A stretch of 64,000 nucleotides of DNA from Octopus sinensis (Eukaryota). The DNA is taken from NCBI RefSeq assembly GCF_006345805.1, contig NC_042997.1, positions 174,964,001 to 175,028,000 on the forward strand. The letters run 5' to 3'. The notes beneath the pieces are model-generated. The model had not been told where the DNA came from. It saw only the letters and a list, made by a program, of their open reading frames with translations, and did not search any database. The position numbers were made by a program, and so were the translations under genes. Shown piece by piece: positions 850-64,000 of this stretch (positions within the stretch are counted from its first letter, which is position 1; every line of letters begins with the position of its first letter).

Positions 850-2330
850 AGCTGTCTATGTACGGACCAAAATTAACCAGAGACATACAGCCTAACGGAA
901 GCACCCAAAATCTCTCCAATCTGAATTTCCACAAAGCAGACTGGAAATGGATCCAAAAAGAGATCCTCAGACCGGACTGGCCGAAATGTCTCTCCACACC
1001 AGACGTTGGCATGAAACTAGAATATTCCATATCTGCTATGCAAAACATATGCCAGAAATATGTCACAGAGCACAAGGCCAACACAAAAGGAACAAGATTC
1101 CAAGGGAGAGGAAGATCCTCATGAGACGACAGACTAAGGTTGCAAATCACTTCAACCAACATCCCAAAAGTAGTGAAATGTCCCACCTAAAAACAACACT
1201 GATGGAGATTGAAAAAAGGCTACAACAATCCTATGTGAGGGAGAAAGCAGACAAAGAAGTCTGGGTTATAAAAACAGTAAGTCAAACCCAAAGGCTTTCT
1301 TTCGTTATGCTAAAGAAACAGCCTCAGTGCGCTGCAAGATAGGACTCCTCTTCCAAAAGGATGGCTCCCTCACAGATAGTCCAACAAGGATCAGTGTGCT
1401 ACTGAATGACCAGTTTAAAAGTGTCTTTACCACTCCATTGGAACATAGACAAGTGAATGAACCGGTGGATTTCTTTGCCGCTTCACCTATAACCAGCGAG
1501 GCAGTTACGATGAATTACATCGACATTAGTGAAGAAGATATACTACTAGCCATAGATGAGGTGGACGCAAACTCAACTGCTGGTCCTGATGGTTTCCCAG
1601 CAATTCTCCTCAAATTATGTAATCGTGCCCTGGCGAAACCACCACAGATTCTCTTCCAGAGCTTTCTTGCAAATGGCAGGCTGCCAAGTAAACTGAAGGA
1701 GGGAATAATATGCCCAATACATAAAGAAGGAAACAGAACAGATGCCAAAAATTATAGGCCTGTCTCTCTGACTTCACACATCAGCAAAGTCATGGAACGG
1801 ATAGCCAGAAGGAAACTAATCGCATTCCTTGAAGAAAACGACTTGCTGAGTGATACCCAGCATGGCATTCGACCAGGTGGGAGCTGCCTGACCCAGCACT
1901 ATCACTGGGTGTTGAGGTAGTTACTCAATAACTCTCAAATGCGGACATAATATAACTTGATTTTGCAAAAGCTTTTGATAACGTGGATCATGGTATGATA
2001 TGCCACAAACTGTGTGACCTCAGCATAGCTGTAAAACCTGAAGCGTGGTTACATAACTTTCTGAAAGATAGAAGTCAGGTAGTAGTGGCCAATGAAGCCA
2101 CCTCAAAGAAAATGCAAATAGTGAGTGGTGTTCCACAGGGCACTATAGTGAGACCACTGCTTTTCATAGTGGCTGTCTCAGATATGCCCTCAGCTGCTCC
2201 GATAGCCACCCTTACTAGCTACGCAAACGATACGAAAGTCTCGCGGAAAATACAGAACCCCAGCGAAGTTGCACACCTGCAGCAGGAGTTGGACTCAGTT
2301 TACAAATGGGCTGAGGACAATTATCAGTAT
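850..2330 (+). mobile_element. Degenerate CR1/L2-type LINE ORF2 fragment (post-endonuclease linker plus reverse transcriptase)
   Basis: Successive frameshifted ORFs carry LNFHKADW, GPDGFPAILLK, IICPIHKEGNRTDAKNYRPVSLTSHISKVMERI, QHGIRPGGSCLTQ, SGVPQGTIVRPLLF and YANDT (degenerate YADD). Confidence 0.9.
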
Positions 2331-3059
2331 GAATGCGAAATTAGTAAAAACAACGAAAGGAATTAATACCGTATTAATTCGTATCATTGTTTTTACTAAT
2401 TTTACATTCATATTAATAAACTGTTAGACCATTTCTAACCCTAACTGTCTTACTTCCTAAATGTCCGAATATGTTCTTCTCTTAATATTTATTTCATATT
2501 ATTGTTTTAATATAGTATTTACTACCTTAATCGTTTTAGGGCCCCTTACAACATCCATCTTCTTATTCATTTATTTATTTATCTTACACCGTATAACGGT
2601 GTCAATAGCTGGTCTTTTGTTTTCAAATTTCAACTGACTAAATACATCGAACGTTGGACCTTGGCCTATCTTACTTCGGACAACAGGTGGAAGGGCTTAA
2701 CTACCTACTGGTAAATAAATAAATTGTATCTAACCGATTAGCACTTTATTAATACTATCAATTAGTACTACAAACATAACTATTATAAATTATTATGATT
2801 AATGTAAAACCTTACTGTACCTACATCCCTTCTCCGACTAAAACCCATTGGCGTATCCCACTATTATTTTTTGTTTTTATATTATCTATTCATCCTACCC
2901 CCCCCCCCTCAACTCCCTTATAAAGGGTTAACCCACCAATTGCTATTTTGGTTTAGTCTTTTACTTAACAGCCCAAAGAGACACACAAGCAAAATGGTAT
3001 GATTACAACCATATTCAACTTTTCCCATTTTCTTCTCTATGCTCTTTTTCTCTATTTAT

Positions 3060-4073: not shown

Positions 4074-4749
4074 CCCTTCTACGTTTCTCTATCTCTCTCA
4101 CCTCCAGTCCCTCGATCTGTCTCTTCTTCTCCTCCCTCGTCACCTTCTCTCTCTCTTCATCTGTCCCTTTCTCCTGTCTTTTGTTCTCACGTGACCGCTA
4201 GCCACTGCTGGGCGCCCTTTTCGTTCCAGCAGTCGTCGAAGCAACACGTATTTGTTCGTCTCCCTGCGGCCATTAGGCACTACTTCATAAGCCAGCCCCA
4301 ACTCAACTCGTCCTGTCGAAAGACCCTTGTCCTACGTCCTGGTTTTGTTTTGTTTTTTATCTTTACCGTTATTGTTTTTACGTTTTTGTATTCTTATTCG
4401 TGCTTTCCTTATTGGTGTCACGTATTATGTATTTTTGTTCGTGTACTTCGTTCGTTTTCCGTCCTCGTGTTGTATACATTCGAAGCTTTCTTCCAAGGGA
4501 TCTAATGCGCTTGGCTTAGATTTTCCTTTGGGGGGCTGCCCAGATCGGAGCAATCTCAAGATTAATCAGCCGAAATTGCGAAGATGATCTGGTTCTTGAC
4601 TGATGACTGAGGGCTTCGAATGTCCCGTCCTGTGGTTCTTGTGTCGTCTCTTTGGTGTTTCATGTTCTTGTCCATGTCTCATTTATTTTTTACTGTTTAC
4701 ATATAATATAATATATATATATATATTATATATATATATATATATATAC

Positions 4750-4945
4750 AGGGAGCGCTTACGAAAAAAAAACAAAAGACGAAGACAGGTGGTGTACAAA
4801 ACAAACAGTTGTTTAGTATAACCGCTCAGGAATAGAAAAAGTATTTTTATTTTCATGTTTCGAGCCTCGCTCTTCTACAGAAAGGGACAAGAAAAAACAA
4901 GGATGAGAGAGAAAAAATGTGTATAGTGGCTAACGATCTATCATG
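4750..4945 (-). mobile_element. ~200-bp TA-embedded element with variant hammerhead motif (copy 1 of 4)
   Basis: Homologous to 24797-24980, 47217-47423 and 63400-63595; minus strand CTTT-CTGTAGA-A-GAGC(GAG)GCTC-GAAACAT at 4851-4884. Confidence 0.75.
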
Positions 4946-4955
4946 GTGACTGATT

Positions 4956-5001
<46 letters not shown>

Positions 5002-5914
5002 TTTTCTAGTTTCAGCTCAGAGCTGCGCCCATGCTGATGCACCGCCGTTTTGTGCTACATTGTTATTGCGACGAACCTCGTCTAATATGTGGCACTTGGT
5101 GAAGAATGGAGTTTGATACAGCTACTCTCATTTGAACCTCTTGCCGTGAGGTAGGTTCATCTGGGACTCTTGACAGGAAGATGTCCAGCTTTGATTTAAA
5201 AACCGCTACATCTACTTTGTGCAAGTTCCTCACTCATTCACTCACACAAACACACATACTCATACACATAAACACAAGTATCCGTCCACCAAGATGAATT
5301 TGCCCATTTCGTTGCTTACGAGACCGGTGGAATATGTAACTGACCAAATGCAAAATATATATTTGGGAGCCATGCACCAGCATATCCGCATTTCAGAGAA
5401 TCAAAGTAAAAGGAGAGAACATACATACACACCTTATTAAACAGGGACAGACAGAGTCATATTGTTAGTTAGTTTTATATTTCACTCATTTTTAGTAAAG
5501 CCTATTAACGTCTTCTTATCTCGGTATAAATTTTTTTTATATATATATTGTTAGCTATCAACGTAAACAAACAAATCTTCATCGTTTACTTTGTACCTCG
5601 TAAATTTATTTTCTAAAGAAACGTGATAGGAAATATATTATTGCTAACTTCATTTAGTAATGCTAATTAACAACATTTTATCTCATTTAGTAAAATCTTA
5701 TTTCGCGACCAACATCAACATAAACAAATGCATGACGTTTACACTGTACTTTCGTAAACATTCTTATACAGAAACGTGAGAGGAAATATTTTAATTTTTC
5801 CTGATAGACAGAGGTAACGTAAGTAAAATTCTATATTTCATTTCATTCGGTTACGAAAAAAGTAGCATTTACCATCAAACGGAAGCAAACACACGAAGCT
5901 TACACCTAACTTTT

Positions 5915-24734: not shown

Positions 24735-24791
<57 letters not shown>

Positions 24792-24796
24792 TATAT

Positions 24797-24980
24797 GATA
24801 GATCGTTAGCCACTACACACATTTTTTTCTCTCCTTGTTTCTCTCCTAATTTTTTCTGTAGAAGAGCGTAGGCTCGAAACGTAAAAGACTTTTTCTATTC
24901 CCGAGCGTTATACTAATACATCTGTTTGTTTTGTACACCACCTGTCTTCGTCTTTTGGGGGGTTTTTTGTAAACTCTCCC
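24797..24980 (+). mobile_element. TA-embedded element with variant hammerhead motif (copy 2, best preserved)
   Basis: CTGTAGA 24856-62, A, GAGC(GTAG)GCTC, GAAA 24876-79, ACGT, site A24883, AAAG. Confidence 0.75.
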
Positions 24981-25092
24981 TGTGTGTTACTATATGCAAA
25001 ATTTTATAACATTCTTCTAACATAACGACTTAAATATATTCTTTAACCTTATAAAACAAGCCTTCTGTAGTTTTTTCACTCTTTTCTATTTG

Positions 25093-30807: not shown

Positions 30808-31792
30808 CGAGGGACGTTCAATAAGTAATGCCTCTGACCCACTTCCAGGTGTTTGATGTAGCTGAAATTTTGCATGTGCAATTACTTATATCTCTATAGA
30901 TTAGGTGGCAAATTACAGCTCTGAACTAATTATGGTTTCTGATTTACAGGTGTTTGAACCGAGTCAAGTGTGAAATGGAGCCTGTTGAGTGTCGAGCAGT
31001 GATCCGGTTTTTGTATTTGAAAGGACGCACACCACGGGAGACTTTTGATGAAATGAAAGTAACATATGGTGATGATGCCCCATCATATGACCTTGTAAAA
31101 CGCTGGCATCGTGAATTCAAACATGGTCGAGACTCTGTGGAAACAGCTCCCAGATCTGGTCGACCCCCTTCTGCCATTGATGAGGCATCTGTCCGTCAAG
31201 TTGAGGCTGCCATTTTGGAAGATCGACGCATAACTATTCGCCAAATAGCCCATGAGGTCAAGATTAGTACCGGGTCTGTGGAAACTATCATTCATGACCA
31301 TTTGCATATGCAAAAGGTGTCTGCCAGATGGATTCCCAGGCTGCTCACACCTTTCCAGAAGCAAGAACGCGTCGAGTGCTCGAGGATGAATTTGGAGACG
31401 TACCAAGAAGATGAGTCAAACTTCTTCAAAAGTCTGATTACACAGGATGAAACATGGGTCCATCACTATGATCCAGAGACCAAAGCCCAGTCAATGCAGT
31501 GGAAGCACCGTGACTCACCTCCTCCAAAGAAGGCAAGGGTGCAGCCCTCTGCTGGCAAGGTCATGCTCACAGTCTTCTGGGACCAGGACGGAGTAGTGAT
31601 GACAGATTTCCTGGATGGAGGACCAAGCTGGGGTCTTTTACAAAAACGGTCTCCAGAGCCGGATCAAACGATGGGAGAATTGCTTAACTCTGAGTGGTTC
31701 CTATGTAGAAAAAGACCAATAACTGTGCCAAGTTCCGTTGCTCTACTGGTATGGTAAGTGGGTCAGGGGCATTACTTATTGAACGCCCCTCG
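30808..31792 (+). mobile_element. Mariner (irritans-like) element, 985 bp, internally deleted
   Basis: TIRs CGAGGGRCGTTCAATAAGTAATGCC and TA duplications at 30806-07 and 31793-94; transposase ORF from ATG 30975. Confidence 0.95.
30975..31757 (+). CDS. Truncated mariner transposase (DNA-binding domains and first catalytic Asp, then frameshift)
   Basis: RAVIRFL..WHREFKHGRDSVETAPRSGRP..ARWIPRLLT..ITQDETWVHHYDPETKAQSMQW..KVMLTVFWD; HDNA and YSPDLAP motifs are absent. Confidence 0.85.
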   Translation: MEPVECRAVIRFLYLKGRTPRETFDEMKVTYGDDAPSYDLVKRWHREFKHGRDSVETAPRSGRPPSAIDEASVRQVEAAILEDRRITIRQIAHEVKISTGSVETIIHDHLHMQKVSARWIPRLLTPFQKQERVECSRMNLETYQEDESNFFKSLITQDETWVHHYDPETKAQSMQWKHRDSPPPKKARVQPSAGKVMLTVFWDQDGVVMTDFLDGGPSWGLLQKRSPEPDQTMGELLNSEWFLCRKRPITVPSSVALLVW

Positions 31793-32839: not shown

Positions 32840-34286
32840 ATGACGATGATGATGATGATGCTGATGACGATGATGGTGACTGCGACGAGGGCGGCGACGG
32901 CGACGACGATGACGATCGTGATTATTATGGCAATAACGAGAATCAAGATCATGATGATCGTCATCATCTTGTTCGTCCTGATTAATGACGATGATGACTG
33001 TGATGATGTGATTATTGATGGCTCTAATGATTATAGCATTGTACATAATCATAATGGCTCTGGGACGATGGTTGTGATGATAACGAGGGCCAATGGCGAT
33101 AGCGATGTTGGTGGTGGTGGTGGTGGTGGTGGTGGTGGTGGTGGTGGTGGTGGTGGTGGTGGTGGTGGTGGTGGTTGATGGTGGTGGTGGTGGTGCCAGT
33201 GGCGGTAATGGTGATGGTGGTGGCGGTGATAATGGTGGGTGTTGTTGTGGTGATGATGGTGGAGGAGGCGGAGGAGGAGGAGGAGGAGGAGGAGGAGGAG
33301 GAAGAGGAGGGGAAGAGATGACGGTGGTGCAACAGTAGTGGAAGCGGCGGCAGCAGCGGTGGTGGTGGTGATGGTGAAAATGATGAAGATGATGATGACG
33401 AGGAGGATGTTGGTAATGGTAACGATGGTAGTGGTGGTGGTGGTGGTGGAGGGAGAGGAGGAGGAGGAGGAGGAGAGGAGATGACGGTGGTGTGCAACAG
33501 TAGTGGAAGCGGCGGCAGCAGCGGTGGTGGTGGTGATGGTGAAAATGATGAAGATGATGATGACGAGGAGGATGTTGGTAATGGTAACGATGGTAGTGGT
33601 GGTGGTGGTGGTGGAGGAGGAGGAGGAGGAGGAGGAGGAGGAGATGACGGTGGTGTAACAGTAGTGGAAGCGGCGGTGGTGTAGTGGTGGTTAAGATGAT
33701 GAAGATGATGATGACGAGGAGGATGTTGATAATGGTAACGATAGTGGTGGTGGCGGTGGTGGTGGTGGTGGTGGTAGTAGTAGCGGTAGTAGCAGTGGTA
33801 GCTATAGTATTTACTGATGATGACGTTCACGGTGACAATGACAACGATGACGAGGAGGGGAGGGGGAGGAGGAGGAGGAGGAGGAGGAGGGCAAGGAGGA
33901 GATCATTGAAAAGAATTGTGAGGAGAAAGAGGAACAGCGGAGGTTCGAATTGAGGGGGAACAGGCGAAAGAGAAGTAAAAAGCTGGCGAAATTAGTAGTG
34001 AGCGCTTGGTATTGGTACTGGAAAGCTAGTCGTGACGGCGGCAGCGGCAGGGCTGGTGGTGGTGGTGGTTGTGGTGGTTGTGGTGGTGGTGGTGGCGGCG
34101 GCGGCGGCGCTGGTGATGGTGGCGGCGGCGGCAGTACTGGTGGTGGTGGTTGTGGTGGTAGTGGTGGTGGCGGTGGCGACAGTGCTGGTGGTGCAGGCGG
34201 CGGCGGCGGCGGCGCTGGTGGTGGTGGCGGCGGCGGCGACAGTACTGGTGGTGGTGGTGGTGGTGGTTGTTGTGTGTGGTGGTAGT

Positions 34287-34324
<38 letters not shown>

Positions 34325-34500
34325 TGGTGTGGTGGTGGTGGTGGTGACGGCGGCGGCGGCAGCGCTGGTGGTGGTGGTGGCGGCGGCGGCAGCGCTGGTG
34401 GTGGTGGTGGCGGCGGCGGCAGCGCTGGTGGTGTTGGTGGCGGCGGCGGCGGCAGCGCTGGTGGTGGTGGTGGTGGTGGTGGTGGTGGTGTAGGTGGTTA
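32840..34500. repeat. Mosaic trinucleotide low-complexity tract (GAT, GGT, GGA, GGC)
   Basis: Directly visible; includes a 163-bp higher-order repeat. Confidence 0.9.
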
Positions 34501-47089: not shown

Positions 47090-47216
47090 TACATACATAC
47101 ATACATACATACATACATACATACATACATTACACATACATACATTACACATATATACATGCATGTCTCCCCTTCTCCCTAGCCCCCCTGTGTGATCCTT
47201 CTCTCCGGCATTCGCC

Positions 47217-47423
47217 ATGATAGATCGCTAGCCACTACGCATTCATTATTTTCTCTCCTTGTTATATCTGTGTTCCTTTCTGGTGAAGTGCGTAGGCTCG
47301 AAACGTTAAAGACATTTTTTACTTCCCGAGCGTTAAACTAAAACATCTGTTTGTTGTCTACACCACCTGTCTTCGTCATTTGTTTTTTTTTGTTTTTTTT
47401 TGTTTTTTTTTGTGAATTCTCCC
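47217..47423 (+). mobile_element. TA/simple-repeat-embedded element with variant hammerhead motif (copy 3)
   Basis: CTTT-CTGGTGA (47280-86)-A-GTGC(GTAG)GCTC-GAAACGT-T-AAAG. Confidence 0.72.
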
Positions 47424-47534
<111 letters not shown>

Positions 47535-60604: not shown

Positions 60605-61123
60605 ATGTCAGAAAAAGACAGCTACGTTTGTACACAGCCAGCCCATGTTACTCCACTGCAGATTCCAAAACTGAAGATAGAACGACGGAAAACAGGGCCG
60701 GATAAGAAGGGAGCCAAAGTAGCTAATCATAAGTGTGATATATGTGGCAAGTCATATACTGAGTTGTCATATTTGAAGGCCCATCAAGTTGTTAGTCATG
60801 GCCCAAATGCAGCTAAACCAAATAAGTGCAACATTCCATCATTGAAGACTTTCAAGTGTGACATTTGCAGTAAACAGTTCAGTAGAAATTACCACCTAGA
60901 CCGCCATCGAATGACCCACACAGGGGAAAAGCCATTCAAGTGTAAAGTTTGTAGCAGGACCTTTAGCCGTAACTATCATCTGCATAGACATGCTTTCATT
61001 CATACTGGTGAGAAGCCATATAGTTGTGAAGTGTGTGCCAAAGCATTTTCAAGAACTGATAAACTTAAAAAACACACTAAGACCCATTTAGCACCTTTTC
61101 GGGAGGTTAAAAGTACAAGATGA
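60605..61123 (+). CDS. C2H2 zinc-finger protein, 172 aa, four fingers (ZNF148/281/740-like array)
   Basis: Four CX2CX12HX3-4H fingers with two TGEKP linkers; ACAATG start context; in-frame stop TAA upstream at 60515-17, so the whole CDS is in this exon. Confidence 0.93.
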   Translation: MSEKDSYVCTQPAHVTPLQIPKLKIERRKTGPDKKGAKVANHKCDICGKSYTELSYLKAHQVVSHGPNAAKPNKCNIPSLKTFKCDICSKQFSRNYHLDRHRMTHTGEKPFKCKVCSRTFSRNYHLHRHAFIHTGEKPYSCEVCAKAFSRTDKLKKHTKTHLAPFREVKSTR

Positions 61124-61140: not shown

Positions 61141-61178
<38 letters not shown>

Positions 61179-61276
61179 ATATATATATATATATACACAT
61201 GTATACCAGAGTAAACACATAAATGTGAAACAAGGTGGAAAAAAGAGTACTCAAATACCAGGGGTAGAGTAATATG

Positions 61277-61455
61277 CTTTATTTAAAAGCAGCAGAAATT
61301 CAACAAAACCTGTTACTCTGAGTTTTACGTTCCTGTTCGTCGGACAGTTTTTGTTAAAAGAAAAAAAAAATGGTTTAACAAAAACTGTCCGACGAACGGT
61401 AACATGAAGCTCAGAGTAACAGGTTTTGTTGAATTTCTGCTGCTTTTAAATAAAG
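61277..61455. repeat. ~82-bp inverted repeat of a hammerhead-bearing PLE-like element, 154 bp after the ZNF stop
   Basis: 61277-61358 pairs with 61374-61455; each arm has CCGACGA-stem II-(G/A)AA(A/G)C-TCAGA-GT-A and a long stem I. Confidence 0.9.
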
Positions 61456-61470
61456 TATATACATATCTAT

Positions 61471-61795
61471 GATCGCCGTCCACTCGTGACCGAGGAAGAC
61501 TATTGCTGACCTTTAGGAACATTGTCTGCTCTAGGACTAACTTACATTTTGCATTTGTGGCTCTGTTGGGGGCTAATGAGCCCTGCTCTTGACAAGCATA
61601 CACGACTACAAACATTGCAAACCAAACTTTCCCCATTCACTATGCAAGCAGTGTGCTTTCAAGCAGCACGCTTAAATTCTTCATGCAGAATACGTGCTCT
61701 TTCAAAGCTGTCAACCCCCTCCTTGACCTGCTTCCTCCGTCTGTAGCAATGACAGGCATTGTTCTCCCAGTTGGTCTCCTGCATATCACAGGCCT
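61471..61795 (-). mobile_element. RTE-type LINE 3' fragment
   Basis: Minus-strand reading VCNVCSRVCLSRAGLISPQQSHKCKM* resembles the RTE C-terminal zinc finger; followed by a short 3' UTR. Confidence 0.7.
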
Positions 61796-62790: not shown

Positions 62791-63399
62791 AACAAGGAGA
62801 GGAGTACAGGTATAGTGTGGGGTACATGCGAATGTGATATGGTCCTTTATGCAAATGTCTTGAGATGGGCAAGAGAGCTAGTGTGTCTAAGTTGGCAGGA
62901 GTAGTTGGAGTGCTGGTGAAAGGAAGCAGTATACAGTGAAGGGAAAATATCCAGTGCCATCCTAAGTTACCATGAGATTGAGAAGAGGAGAAAGTGATTT
63001 GAGAGGTAAATAATAAAAGCATGAATGGTAAAGGTTTTGACAATAGAGATATGTGAAACTGGCATGACTGACAGACATATGTGTGGATGTGATAGAGAGG
63101 TCTTACAGAGATGAGAAGCTATCATCATCATCATAATCATCATTTAACATCAATTTTCCATGCTGGCATGGCTTGGACTGTTTGGCAAGAGCTGCCCAGG
63201 CTCTATATCTCTTTTGGCATGGTTTCTATGGCTGGATGCCCTTCCTAATGCCAACCACTTTACAGGGTGTACCAGGTGCTTTTACACAGTACCAGCATGG
63301 GTGCATTTACAGGGCACCAGCATCCACAAGGTTAGGAATGCTTAGCTGGAGAGGGATGCAGGGAGCAGCCTGTATGCAAGGACAACTATATATATAGTT

Positions 63400-63595
63400 G
63401 AAATTTACAGAAAAGCAAAAGACAGAAACAGGTGTATAAGCAACAAGCAAGTGTATTAGTTTCATGCTCGGAAAGGTGAGAAAGTCTTTTACATTTCGAG
63501 CCTATGCTCTTCAACAGAAAGTTTCATGAGGAAATAAACAGAGAGAGAATAAAAAAACTTTTGGTGTTTGCATACCTATACATGTATATACAGGT
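63400..63595 (-). mobile_element. TA-embedded element with variant hammerhead motif (copy 4)
   Basis: CTTT-CTGTTGA-A-GAGC(ATAG)GCTC-GAAATGT-A-AAAG at 63486-63521. Confidence 0.7.
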
Positions 63596-64000
63596 ACCCA
63601 TATATATATATATTGGACAGGTAGGTCTTCTGCATAACATGTCACCACTCAACATGGATGATCCTTTGACATCTCTCCCCTCTTAAAGGTAACAACTTCG
63701 GATCTGTCTTCATTACATTGTCTTCCTCAATCTCCTTTTTCTACAGGTTCATTCATTTTGACTGTGTAATGCTTTTGTTTTACAGTTGTCCTCTTCCATA
63801 TGCATCATATGACCATACCAAGGTTATCTTCTGCTTTGTGTACTACATCTAATTCCTCTTATGTTCACTTTGCTTTTTTCTCTCTGCTCATTAATGCATT
63901 CAGCAGAGAATGCTCACTTTTTCTATTTTTAGTTTGCACAATTATTCTGCATTTAAGGCCTATGTTACTCTCTACAGTACAACAGCATGTTTTATACACA

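What the first reader, a model, noticed from the sequence alone, without database searches (positions are those of the whole stretch)
61277..61455. Double-hammerhead hairpin in the presumed ZNF 3' UTR, ending in the first AATAAA
Seen: ~82-bp arms with a 15-nt loop. Each arm is a type I hammerhead fold with a 15-position stem I (one mismatch), core CCGACGA, stem III CT-CAG-AG and a GUA site. The sense copy has GAAG for GAAA (61409) and a broken stem II; the antisense copy has AAAA. Their consensus restores GAAAC and stem II ACG(GGAA)CGT. The first AATAAA after the stop codon is at 61449-54, at the end of the right arm. Inference: a PLE remnant supplies the poly(A) signal and a long dsRNA (ADAR/Staufen substrate) to a host mRNA. 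Its sense ribozyme is disabled by mutation and by arm-arm pairing.
Basis: partly seen in the sequence, partly recalled or inferred. Interest (0 to 1): 0.7.

Follow-up and report, generated by a model that had tools for sequence, protein, structure and literature searches.

The report
Decayed inverted hammerhead-retroelement pair after octopus ZNF gene
Just downstream of an Octopus sinensis zinc-finger gene sit two head-to-head copies of an 82-base retroelement fragment carrying a mutated hammerhead ribozyme; it is a real but ordinary transposon fossil, and any role in ending or marking the mRNA is untested.

Summary
Window 61277-61455 is an 82+82-nt inverted repeat with a 15-nt spacer. As RNA it folds at -134 kcal/mol (z = -25.8). 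Each arm has the layout of a type I hammerhead, and AATAAA at 61449-54 is the first canonical hexamer after the ZNF stop codon (61123).

The hammerhead resemblance is not chance. Only 3 of 2,000,000 shuffles of the 30-nt interior do as well. A pattern taken from the arm found 10 metagenome contigs (about 0.2 expected). All 10 have the canonical CUGAYGA and GAAA, and their stem II covaries.

Both octopus arms are degenerate. Both carry U4C. The left arm has G12A. The right arm has A15.1G, and in O. sinensis a CpG loss also breaks its stem II.

Head-to-head inverted copies, AT-rich flanks and an AAATAAAG tail also occur in the relatives and match published Penelope-like-element (PLE) insertion behaviour. 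No PLE gene or second octopus copy could be examined.

The palindrome is shared with O. vulgaris, absent at the homologous Argonauta site, and not more conserved than its flanks.

Use as a poly(A) signal, or as an ADAR/Staufen substrate, remains untested. Verdict: a new member of a known kind, of modest interest.

The parts
60605..61123 (+). C2H2 zinc-finger ORF (172 aa, stop TGA 61121-61123): host gene context
   Evidence: zf-C2H2, E = 1e-20. It is a called protein in O. sinensis and O. vulgaris with identical sequence. The Argonauta hians ortholog is 76% identical. There is 1 synonymous and 0 non-synonymous difference between the Octopus species.
61141..61206 (.). (TA)n(TG)n(TA)n microsatellite between the stop codon and the palindrome
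   Evidence: Its length differs between O. sinensis and O. vulgaris.
61216..61270 (+). Last 3'-flank block with detectable homology to the Argonauta 3' UTR; homology stops about 6 nt before the palindrome
   Evidence: local score 44, reached by 0 of 500 shuffles. The arm and the right flank show no similarity (481/500 and 478/500 shuffles do as well).
61272..61275 (.). ATAT left of the palindrome (AT-rich target, or a possible 4-bp target duplication with 61457-61460)
   Evidence: Weak evidence, since it lies in TA-rich sequence.
61277..61358 (-). Left arm: antisense copy of the 82-nt unit. On the minus strand: stem I 5' 61358-61344, core CCGACGA 61343-61337, stem II 61336-61327, AAAA (G12A) 61326-61323, helix III 61322-61316, UA 61315-61314, stem I 3' 61313-61299, tail 61298-61277 (minus-strand AATAAA at 61283-61278)
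   Evidence: Model R1 scores it 34.1 bits, E = 7e-9.
61359..61373 (.). 15-nt A-rich spacer AGAAAAAAAAAATGG between the 5' ends of the two copies
   Evidence: AG/GA differs in O. vulgaris.
61374..61455 (+). Right arm: sense copy of the 82-nt unit (same strand as the ZNF gene), comprising hammerhead-like motif 61374-61433 and tail 61434-61455
   Evidence: Model R1 scores it 35.5 bits. The O. vulgaris copy scores 38.3 bits.
61389..61395 (+). Core box CCGACGA (consensus CUGANGA; U4C shared by both arms)
   Evidence: All 10 relatives have CTGA[CT]GA.
61396..61405 (+). Stem II/loop II ACGGTAACAT. Broken in O. sinensis by A at 61404; O. vulgaris has G, giving ACG-GUAA-CGU
61406..61409 (+). GAAG in place of GAAA (A15.1G at 61409)
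   Evidence: All relatives have GAAA.
61410..61418 (+). Helix III CUCAGAG plus UA; the predicted (now disabled) cleavage site follows A61418
   Evidence: Identical in all relatives, though the search pattern required it.
61437..61455 (+). Tail CTGCTGCTTTTAAATAAAG containing AATAAA (61449-61454), the first canonical poly(A) hexamer after the stop
   Evidence: Relative L007 has a 17/19 match at -20 from its hammerhead, with 0 hits in 200 shuffled sets.
61457..61460 (.). ATAT right of the palindrome (partner of 61272-61275)

Best explanation
This is a transposon fossil. Two copies of an 82-nt unit are joined head-to-head, with their 5' ends facing across a 15-nt A-rich spacer and their 3' tails pointing outward. 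Each unit is a type I hammerhead motif followed by a 22-nt tail ending in AAATAAAG.

The pair sits in AT-rich DNA about 150 nt downstream of a zinc-finger gene's stop codon in Octopus sinensis. It most likely arose in one retrotransposition event by Penelope-like-element machinery, which can prime reverse transcription from both cut DNA strands and often leaves inverted, 5'-truncated copies (inferred from the literature). The event happened after the Octopus and Argonauta lineages split and well before O. sinensis and O. vulgaris split.

Both ribozyme copies are degenerate. Both carry U4C. The left copy has lost the general base G12. The right copy has A15.1G and, in O. sinensis, a broken stem II.

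Any transcript that spans both arms would fold into an 82-87-bp hairpin, not into hammerheads. So today the feature acts, at most, as a passive long hairpin with an AAUAAA at its AU-rich base.

Shown: the anatomy, the non-chance hammerhead ancestry, the species distribution, and the lack of extra conservation. Inferred: PLE-type origin and neutrality. Unknown: whether it is transcribed.
For: Anatomy and hairpin energy.

Hammerhead ancestry:
- Shuffle test, 3 of 2,000,000.
- Ten metagenome relatives with canonical CUGAYGA and GAAA.
- In those relatives stem II, which the pattern left free, is complementary, with compensatory double changes at 3 of 4 pairs; 88.6% of cells pair against 25-44% in slid controls.
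- Model R1 scores: arms 34-38 bits, intact relatives 56-69 bits, a decayed inverted relative 37.8 bits.

Head-to-head arrangement: L009/L011 hold a second, inverted copy 253 nt from the first, with its core also decayed to CCAATGA.

Literature:
- 'Dual min-HHRs ... in opposite strands' (PMC4209133).
- An inverted 5'-truncated copy adjacent to the insertion, a 'tail', and a (TA)n bias (PMC8557442).
- The PLE protein cleaves and extends both DNA strands at AT-rich sites (PMC11167929).
- Cephalopods carry Penelope elements and 235 Hammerhead_1 loci (PMC6962438).

The tail belongs to the element: 17/19 match beside the L007 hammerhead.

Age and distribution: present in O. vulgaris. The Argonauta UTR homology stops about 6 nt before it, and no palindrome lies within 2 kb. 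The arms differ at 4-5 of 82 positions, whereas the species differ at about 0.25% in the flanks.

No sign of constraint: 3/179 substitutions in the palindrome against 5/1935 downstream and 0/86 in the UTR.
Against: - No RT/GIY-YIG coding remnant is near the palindrome.
- No second copy of the unit occurs in the 64-kb window or in the extra octopod DNA held. The multi-copy nature of the family in Octopus is therefore unproven.
- In several relatives, copies share their 5' boundary at the hammerhead and differ downstream. That is not the classic picture of 5' truncation.
- Octopus stem I (15 bp) is much longer than in the relatives (4-6 bp).
- The relatives were found with a pattern taken from the octopus arm, so the model scores are partly circular.
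- All five arm differences within the core cluster in 12 nt (stem II to GAAA), which simple neutral decay does not predict.
- Neutrality is argued from very few substitutions.
Confidence: 0.7

Rival explanations
1. Exapted 3'-end module. The ZNF mRNA runs through the palindrome and is polyadenylated using AAUAAA at 61449. Its 3' UTR therefore carries an 82-87-bp duplex that is edited by ADAR or bound by Staufen or other dsRNA-binding proteins.
For: - 61449-61454 is the first canonical AATAAA after the stop; only weak variants lie upstream.
- The hexamer lies in the element's tail.
- The Argonauta ortholog has its AATAAA about 11 nt after the last conserved UTR block. That is about where the palindrome now sits, so the ancestral signal was probably displaced or replaced.
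- On the + strand, 4 of the 6 arm differences are G.U wobbles, so the sense RNA hairpin is nearly continuous.
- From general knowledge: cephalopods edit RNA heavily, and inverted repeats in 3' UTRs are classic ADAR/Staufen substrates.
Against: - No transcript, 3'-end or editing data could be reached.
- No assembled transcript contig carrying this protein was on record.
- The hexamer is base-paired with UUUAUU at 61279-61284 at the foot of the hairpin, although that end is AU-rich and may fray.
- AGTAAA/CATAAA at 61210-61223 could end the mRNA before the palindrome.
- The palindrome accumulates changes at least as fast as its flanks.
- Four G.U wobbles among five transitions has p of about 0.19 (my own binomial reckoning, not a tool output).
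Confidence: 0.2
2. The hairpin is a source of small RNAs: an hpRNA, endo-siRNA or young miRNA-like locus processed by Dicer from a long inverted-repeat transcript.
For: It is a near-perfect duplex of 80 bp or more. Many plant miRNA-precursor models match it as a generic long hairpin, for example MIR2670 at 68.6 bits.
Against: All those matches are far below their gathering scores (68.6 against 117, and similar). They reflect shape only, and none passes at the gathering threshold. There are no small-RNA data and no sign of conservation.
Confidence: 0.07
3. A miniature inverted-repeat DNA transposon (MITE), or a host-made palindromic duplication, whose likeness to a hammerhead is incidental.
For: The whole element is one long inverted repeat flanked by ATAT on both sides. 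Only one copy was seen. Rfam calls no hammerhead.
Against: - A hammerhead likeness this good is reached by about 1.5 in a million shuffles.
- Relatives with canonical cores and a covarying stem II occur mostly as single, non-palindromic copies, which is not how MITEs are built.
- Rfam also misses the canonical relatives.
- There is no distinct internal region between the terminal repeats.
Confidence: 0.05

Closest known systems
Hammerhead motifs of Penelope-like elements (PLEs) and their truncated or inverted insertions (Cervera & de la Pena 2014, PMC4209133; Craig et al. 2021, PMC8557442; PMC11167929)
   Same: - A type I hammerhead carried by a dispersed retroelement fragment.
- Pairs of motifs on opposite strands close together.
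- Inverted, 5'-truncated copies joined head-to-head.
- AT/(TA)n-rich target sites.
- A short terminal 'tail'.
- Many copies in genomes are degenerate, and activity is low even when they are intact.
   Different: - No RT/GIY-YIG ORF or pseudo-LTR could be tied to this unit.
- The motif is not the 'min-HHR' design. It has a real 3-bp helix III with a CAG loop, a 3-bp stem II with an A10.1-U11.1 closing pair rather than G-C, no bulged base after A9, and an unusually long 15-bp stem I.
- The unit is only 82 nt long.
Metazoan non-LTR retrozymes (Cervera & de la Pena 2020, PMC7229834; proposed to be non-autonomous PLE derivatives in bioRxiv 10.64898/2026.07.22.740005)
   Same: A small non-coding unit built around a type I hammerhead. 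Helix III is a short stem with a small loop, described as typical of invertebrate motifs. They are found in molluscs and cnidarians.
   Different: Retrozymes are direct tandem repeats of about 170-400 nt that give circular RNAs. This feature is a single inverted pair of 82-nt units, and no tandem copies were seen in the window or in the relatives.
Hammerhead ribozymes in mRNA 3' UTRs (rodent Clec2-type discontinuous hammerhead, Martick et al. 2008; recalled from memory, cited within PMC4209133)
   Same: A sense-strand hammerhead motif lies between a stop codon and the poly(A) signal. If active, it would cut off the poly(A) tail.
   Different: The octopus motif is contiguous, TE-derived, mutated at U4 and A15.1, and locked in a long hairpin with its inverted twin. 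No activity is expected.
Inverted TE pairs in 3' UTRs (for example inverted Alu repeats) as ADAR, Staufen or nuclear-retention substrates, and TE-derived poly(A) signals (general knowledge, not tested here)
   Same: Two inverted copies of a retroelement fragment downstream of a stop codon would form a long intramolecular duplex. The element carries an AATAAA.
   Different: The arms are much shorter and almost perfectly paired, with a 15-nt loop. Transcription, editing and poly(A) use are all unverified.

Membership tests
Hammerhead ribozyme, type I | Three helices around a junction, with helix I open-ended, in the order stem I - core box - stem II - GAAA - stem III - UH - stem I | tested here: met
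   The order and spacing are exact in both arms. Stem I pairs at 14 of 15 positions, and helix III is CU-CAG-AG. Model R1 aligns end to end at 34-38 bits. The shuffle test gives 3 of 2,000,000.
Hammerhead ribozyme, type I | Core box C3 U4 G5 A6 N7 G8 A9 | tested here: not met
   Both arms read CCGACGA, which is U4C. All 10 relatives have U4. [quoted passage not shown]
Hammerhead ribozyme, type I | G12 A13 A14 with an A15.1-U16.1 pair | tested here: not met
   The right arm has GAAG (A15.1G at 61409). The left arm has AAAA (G12A), and G12 is the general base (PMC6155905). Both seen.
Hammerhead ribozyme, type I | Stem II formed | tested here: inconclusive
   It is broken in both O. sinensis arms (1 and 2 closing pairs). 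It is intact in the O. vulgaris right arm as ACG-GUAA-CGU.
Hammerhead ribozyme, type I | Cleavage site N-U-H | tested here: met
   GUA at 61416-61418 and its mirror.
Hammerhead ribozyme, type I | Self-cleavage activity | not testable with these tools
   This needs in vitro transcription assays.
Hammerhead ribozyme, type I | Match to Rfam hammerhead models | tested here: not met
   There is no hit at gathering score or at E <= 10. The test is insensitive, however: the 10 canonical-core relatives also give no hit at E <= 1.
Penelope-like element (PLE) | ORF encoding a TERT-like reverse transcriptase plus a GIY-YIG endonuclease | tested here: not met
   No such ORF occurs within 57-64 kb. The RVT_1 fragments at 1327-2366 are 59 kb away, and no GIY-YIG match was seen among the 8 ORFs scanned. 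A short remnant is not expected to keep one.
Penelope-like element (PLE) | Hammerhead located in a pseudo-LTR of a full element of the same family | not testable with these tools
   No searchable Octopus genome was available. The translated-element probe found nothing. The metagenome relatives carry no PLE ORFs.
Penelope-like element (PLE) | Insertion architecture: an inverted 5'-truncated copy joined head-to-head, with optional tail, at an AT-rich or (TA)n target | tested here: met
   The 5' ends face each other across 15 nt and the tails point outward. ATAT lies on both sides, and a (TA)n tract lies 70 nt upstream. The same head-to-head layout occurs in L009/L011.
Penelope-like element (PLE) | Multi-copy dispersed family in the host genome | tested here: inconclusive
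   No second copy occurs in about 71 kb of O. sinensis or in 20 kb of Argonauta. Relatives are multi-copy in other, unidentified eukaryotes.
Non-LTR retrozyme | Direct tandem repeats (about 170-400 nt), each with one hammerhead | tested here: not met
   This is a single inverted pair of 82-nt units with no tandem copies.
MITE (DNA-transposon derivative) | Short terminal inverted repeats around a non-palindromic body, fixed target duplication, and many similar copies | tested here: not met
   The whole element is one palindrome. Relatives are mostly single-orientation copies that begin at the hammerhead. Only a trivial ATAT flank is present.
miRNA precursor families (MIR2670, MIR837 and others) | Score at or above the family's gathering threshold | tested here: not met
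   The best score is 68.6 bits against a threshold of 117. These are generic long-hairpin matches.

The most novel reading that the evidence does not exclude
The palindrome is not just a fossil. The ZNF mRNA's only strong poly(A) signal sits in the AU-rich foot of an 82-87-bp hairpin made by two dead ribozyme copies. 3'-end formation, and hence expression, would then depend on opening or A-to-I editing of that duplex. That would be an ADAR- or helicase-gated poly(A) switch in an animal known for massive RNA editing.

A second, more modest reading concerns the 82-nt hammerhead-plus-AAUAAAG unit. It may be a cross-phylum mini-element that PLE machinery mobilises as head-to-head dimers.
Probability: 0.07. 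Interest if true: 0.7.

Novelty: new member of a known kind. Interest (0 to 1): 0.3.

Why it matters
As it stands, this is one more decayed hammerhead-bearing retroelement insertion, a class described since 2014.

It has some value as a clean example. It shows the head-to-head insertion geometry predicted from the both-strand priming seen in vitro for a PLE. It also shows that curated Rfam models miss these short hammerheads.

If the ZNF mRNA really ends at 61449, the case would show a retroelement replacing a gene's poly(A) signal while placing a long duplex in the 3' UTR of a cephalopod transcript. That could be tested directly with public RNA-seq data.

Tried and rejected
1. Rfam at gathering score on the whole window, and at E <= 10 on 61200-61520. 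No hammerhead was called, only generic miRNA hairpin models. I set this negative aside after the canonical relatives also gave no hit.
2. A strict home-made descriptor on the window. It misses the O. sinensis arms because stem II is broken, and loose two-defect matches occur about once per 20 kb. I replaced it with a conditional shuffle test.
3. BLAST of the element against the window found no other copy.
4. A protein search with the 61-aa open frame across the element, meant to catch spurious ORFs on other copies, found nothing.
5. Pattern scans of the viral and prokaryotic genome collections gave 0 hits, as expected.
6. ORF and stop-free-segment surveys of the metagenome contigs for PLE genes found none. 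L012 has a LINE-like RT remnant. L007 and L013 hold a host FN3 exon.
7. A protein search with that FN3 exon to name the host of the relatives returned only unnamed metagenome or Logan proteins, so the host remains unknown. The more distant locus L014 lacks the hammerhead.
8. A first Argonauta alignment was dominated by (TA)n. I repeated it without the microsatellite.
9. The MITE, miRNA and chance explanations were considered and ranked low (see the rival explanations).
10. Random sampling of more Octopus DNA through protein look-ups was judged too inefficient, at about 20 kb per look-up, to bound copy number. I did not pursue it.

Full report
**Source and context**

The window is Octopus sinensis chromosomal DNA. 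It matches GCA_006345805.1 CM016859.1 exactly.

The ORF at 60605-61123 encodes a 172-aa C2H2 zinc-finger protein. That protein is called in both O. sinensis and O. vulgaris with an identical sequence. Its ortholog in Argonauta hians is 76% identical. The finding lies 154-332 nt downstream of the stop codon.

**Observation**

The inverted repeat is real. The arms are 61272-61358 and 61374-61460, 93% complementary, with a 15-nt spacer.

The + strand RNA folds into one hairpin of -134.2 kcal/mol, against -37.7 +/- 3.7 for shuffles (z = -25.8). Single arms fold at only -15.7 and -16.2 kcal/mol and are not distinguishable from shuffles.

Read 5' to 3', the right arm is:
- stem I: UUUAACAAAAACUGU
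- core: CCGACGA
- stem II: ACGGUAACAU
- GAAG
- helix III: CUCAGAG
- UA
- stem I: ACAGGUUUUGUUGAA
- tail: UUUCUGCUGCUUUUAAAUAAAG

The left arm is its reverse complement. It has ACAGGAACGU in stem II and AAAA in place of GAAG. AATAAA at 61449-54 is indeed the first canonical hexamer after the stop; only AGTAAA (61210) and CATAAA (61218) precede it.

**Is the hammerhead likeness chance?**

Rfam reports nothing at gathering score. At E <= 10 it reports no hammerhead, only generic long-hairpin miRNA models far below their thresholds.

A loose descriptor finds two-defect 'hammerheads' about once per 20 kb in this window, so a bare motif match means little. Conditional on the architecture seen here (a hairpin enclosing 30 nt), the picture changes. 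Only 3 of 2,000,000 shuffles of the interior reach <=2 core defects with stems II and III formed.

I then scanned public collections with CTGTCYGAYGA-N(8-14)-RAARCTCAGAGTAAC. There were no hits in viral or prokaryotic genome contigs. There were 10 hits in metagenome contigs, where my own rough estimate, not a tool output, is about 0.2 by chance.

Several features of those hits were not forced by the pattern:
- All 10 have U at core position 4.
- All 10 have GAAA.
- All have a complementary stem II of 4-5 bp whose sequence differs between copies.
- On the 8 distinct sequences, 88.6% of cells pair, against 25-44% when partners are slid.
- Three of the four stem II pairs show compensatory double changes.

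So a real type I hammerhead family exists with exactly this helix III, this GUA site and this CUGU/ACAG stem I base. The octopus arms are degenerate members of it.

A covariance model built from the relatives puts this on a scale:

| Sequence | Bits |
|---|---|
| Intact relatives | 56-69 |
| Decayed inverted relative (L009/L011) | 37.8 |
| O. vulgaris right arm | 38.3 |
| O. sinensis arms | 35.5 and 34.1 |
| Next hit in the window | 18.8 |

This is partly circular, because the pattern came from the octopus arm. Rfam also fails on the canonical relatives at E <= 1, so its silence on the octopus arms is uninformative.

**State of the ribozymes**

- Both arms carry U4C (CCGACGA). U4C is a known natural variant that lowers activity considerably (PMC3088659), and mutations in the CUGA turn give low activity in deep mutagenesis (PMC9901934).
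- The left (antisense) copy has G12A. G12 is the general base (PMC6155905).
- The right (sense) copy has A15.1G.
- In O. sinensis the right copy also has a C.A mismatch in stem II. O. vulgaris has G at that site. This is a CpG loss in O. sinensis, and stem II is intact in O. vulgaris as ACG-GUAA-CGU.

The 'repaired consensus' would nevertheless still carry C4.

All five arm differences inside the 82-nt core lie within arm positions 25-36, from stem II to GAAA. The other 77 positions are identical. I have no firm explanation for this clustering. Two of the five sites are CpG sites. Stem II is also the variable part of the family, so the arms may have been copied from two different templates.

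**Origin**

Independent relatives share homology that starts at the hammerhead. L009/L011 contain a second copy in inverted orientation. Its 5' end faces the first copy at 253 nt, and its core has decayed to CCAATGA. This is the octopus arrangement with a longer spacer.

L007 has CTGTTGTTTTTAAATAAAG directly upstream of its hammerhead. That is 17/19 identical to the octopus tail at 61437-61455, and 200 shuffled sets gave 0 hits. AATAAAG-like hexamers also sit just 5' of the hammerhead in L004, L006 and the inverted L009 copy.

Published work provides the frame:
- PLE hammerheads are abundant and mostly occur as single truncated copies. They sometimes occur as 'dual min-HHRs ... in opposite strands' (PMC4209133).
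- PLE insertions often carry an inverted 5'-truncated copy immediately adjacent, a variable tail, and a (TA)n bias (PMC8557442).
- A purified PLE protein cleaves AT-rich DNA and extends both strands (PMC11167929). That would give head-to-head copies with their 3' ends outward.
- Cephalopods carry Penelope elements and Rfam-detectable hammerheads (PMC6962438).
- Retrozymes, the other animal hammerhead repeats, are direct tandems (PMC7229834). A recent preprint argues that they derive from PLEs (10.64898/2026.07.22.740005).

The octopus palindrome is flanked by ATAT on both sides and lies 70 nt from a (TA)n tract.

Some things could not be shown:
- No RT/GIY-YIG sequence lies near it.
- No PLE ORF occurs in the relatives' contigs.
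- No second octopus copy was found.

The motif also differs from the published 'min-HHR' design. It has a 3-bp helix III with a loop, a short stem II closed by A-U, no bulged base after A9, and a 15-bp stem I.

I therefore file it as a PLE-type or retrozyme-type hammerhead remnant. I do not file it as a proven PLE fragment.

**Age and constraint**

O. vulgaris has the same palindrome. In Argonauta, the 3' UTR is significantly similar to octopus 61216-61270 (score 44; 0 of 500 shuffles reach it). The similarity stops about 6 nt before the palindrome. Neither the arm nor the right flank has a counterpart, and no comparable inverted repeat lies within 2 kb. The insertion therefore postdates the split from Argonauta, or was lost there.

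Substitutions between the two Octopus species, by region:

| Region | Substitutions |
|---|---|
| CDS | 1/519 (synonymous) |
| Unique UTR | 0/86 |
| Downstream flank | 5/1935 |
| Palindrome | 3/179 (two in the A-rich spacer, one CpG) |

The palindrome is thus not under visibly stronger constraint than its surroundings. The arm-to-arm divergence of 4-5/82 implies that it is much older than the species split.

**The functional claims**

The AATAAA lies in the symmetric part of the arms, and its context matches the tail of a relative. An element origin is therefore the simpler reading.

Argonauta, however, has its own AATAAA about 11 nt after the last homologous block. The ancestral signal therefore lay about where the palindrome now sits. 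The right-hand hexamer could be that host signal, with the element inserted just upstream of it. The two readings cannot be separated without an empty site from a closer relative.

In the RNA hairpin, the hexamer pairs with UUUAUU at 61279-84, at the AU-rich foot of the stem. This may hinder recognition, though probably not completely.

On the sense strand, 4 of the 6 arm differences are G.U wobbles. Among five transitions this is not significant, with p of about 0.19 by my own binomial reckoning.

No transcript evidence was reachable. Only the two genome records carry the exact protein. Use as a poly(A) signal, and ADAR, Staufen or Dicer engagement, remain hypotheses that public RNA data could settle.

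**Verdict**

- It is a new member of a known kind and of modest interest.

Noticed in passing
window 24745-25030 (+), 47165-47440 (+), 63360-63630 (-), 4740-5005 (-): A second, unrelated dispersed repeat of about 200 nt has at least 4 copies in 64 kb, and three of them abut (TA)n. Its consensus carries an almost perfect 'min-HHR': CUUU|CUGUAGA|A|GAGC-GUAG-GCUC|GAAAC|GU|A|AAAG. It shows the bulged base after A9, the G10.1-C11.1 pair and the palindromic ACGU described for PLE hammerheads. Core position 6, however, is U/G in every copy instead of the invariant A. It may be an abundant octopus SINE-like or PLE-derived family whose master copy has a non-canonical core.
   Followed up: partly
L009 631-976 and L011 1311-1656: These metagenome contigs, from an unidentified eukaryote, hold a head-to-head inverted pair of the same hammerhead family, 253 nt apart. 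One copy is intact (62 bits). The other is decayed (37.8 bits, core CCAATGA). Further long palindromes lie nearby.
   Followed up: partly
L007 918-963 and L013 789-834: The hammerhead sits in sense orientation about 570 nt downstream of a fibronectin-III exon of a titin-like host gene. The two loci are orthologous and 80% identical over 1.7 kb. A more distant ortholog, L014, lacks it. The host organism could not be named.
   Followed up: partly
L004-L013 (all hammerhead sites): Rfam 15 detects none of these ten canonical-core type I hammerheads at E <= 1. Short hammerheads with a 4-6-bp stem I are invisible to the curated models, so Rfam-based hammerhead counts in invertebrate genomes are likely to be underestimates.
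   Followed up: yes
window 61323-61334 / 61398-61409: All five arm-to-arm differences inside the 82-nt core fall within 12 nt, from stem II to GAAA, while the other 77 positions are identical. Two are CpG sites. The clustering is otherwise unexplained. Possible causes include two different template RNAs, or gene conversion elsewhere in the arms.
   Followed up: partly
window 61277-61455 against flanks: Between O. sinensis and O. vulgaris the palindrome has 3/179 differences, against 5/1935 in the downstream flank. This is mildly faster change, not conservation. Two of the three differences are an AG/GA shift in the A-run spacer.
   Followed up: yes
window 30954-31757 (+): A mariner/Mos1-type transposase remnant (HTH_48 plus Transposase_1, E = 2e-13).
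   Followed up: no
window 1327-2366 (+): Two adjacent ORF fragments with weak RVT_1 matches (E about 4e-5). This is a decayed non-LTR-type reverse transcriptase, and no GIY-YIG match was seen.
   Followed up: no
window 33024-34493 and many other sites: The window has a very high density of microsatellites and low-complexity tracts: (TA)n, (CA)n, and His/Pro/Val/Ala-coding runs. These create long spurious ORFs. GC content is 38% and CpG observed/expected is 0.74.
   Followed up: no
L003 10511-10525 and 10600-10615 (Argonauta hians): The Argonauta ortholog has AATAAA hexamers overlapping or just after its stop codon, and another about 100 nt downstream. Its 3' UTR is therefore probably much shorter than any octopus UTR that would include the palindrome.
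   Followed up: partly
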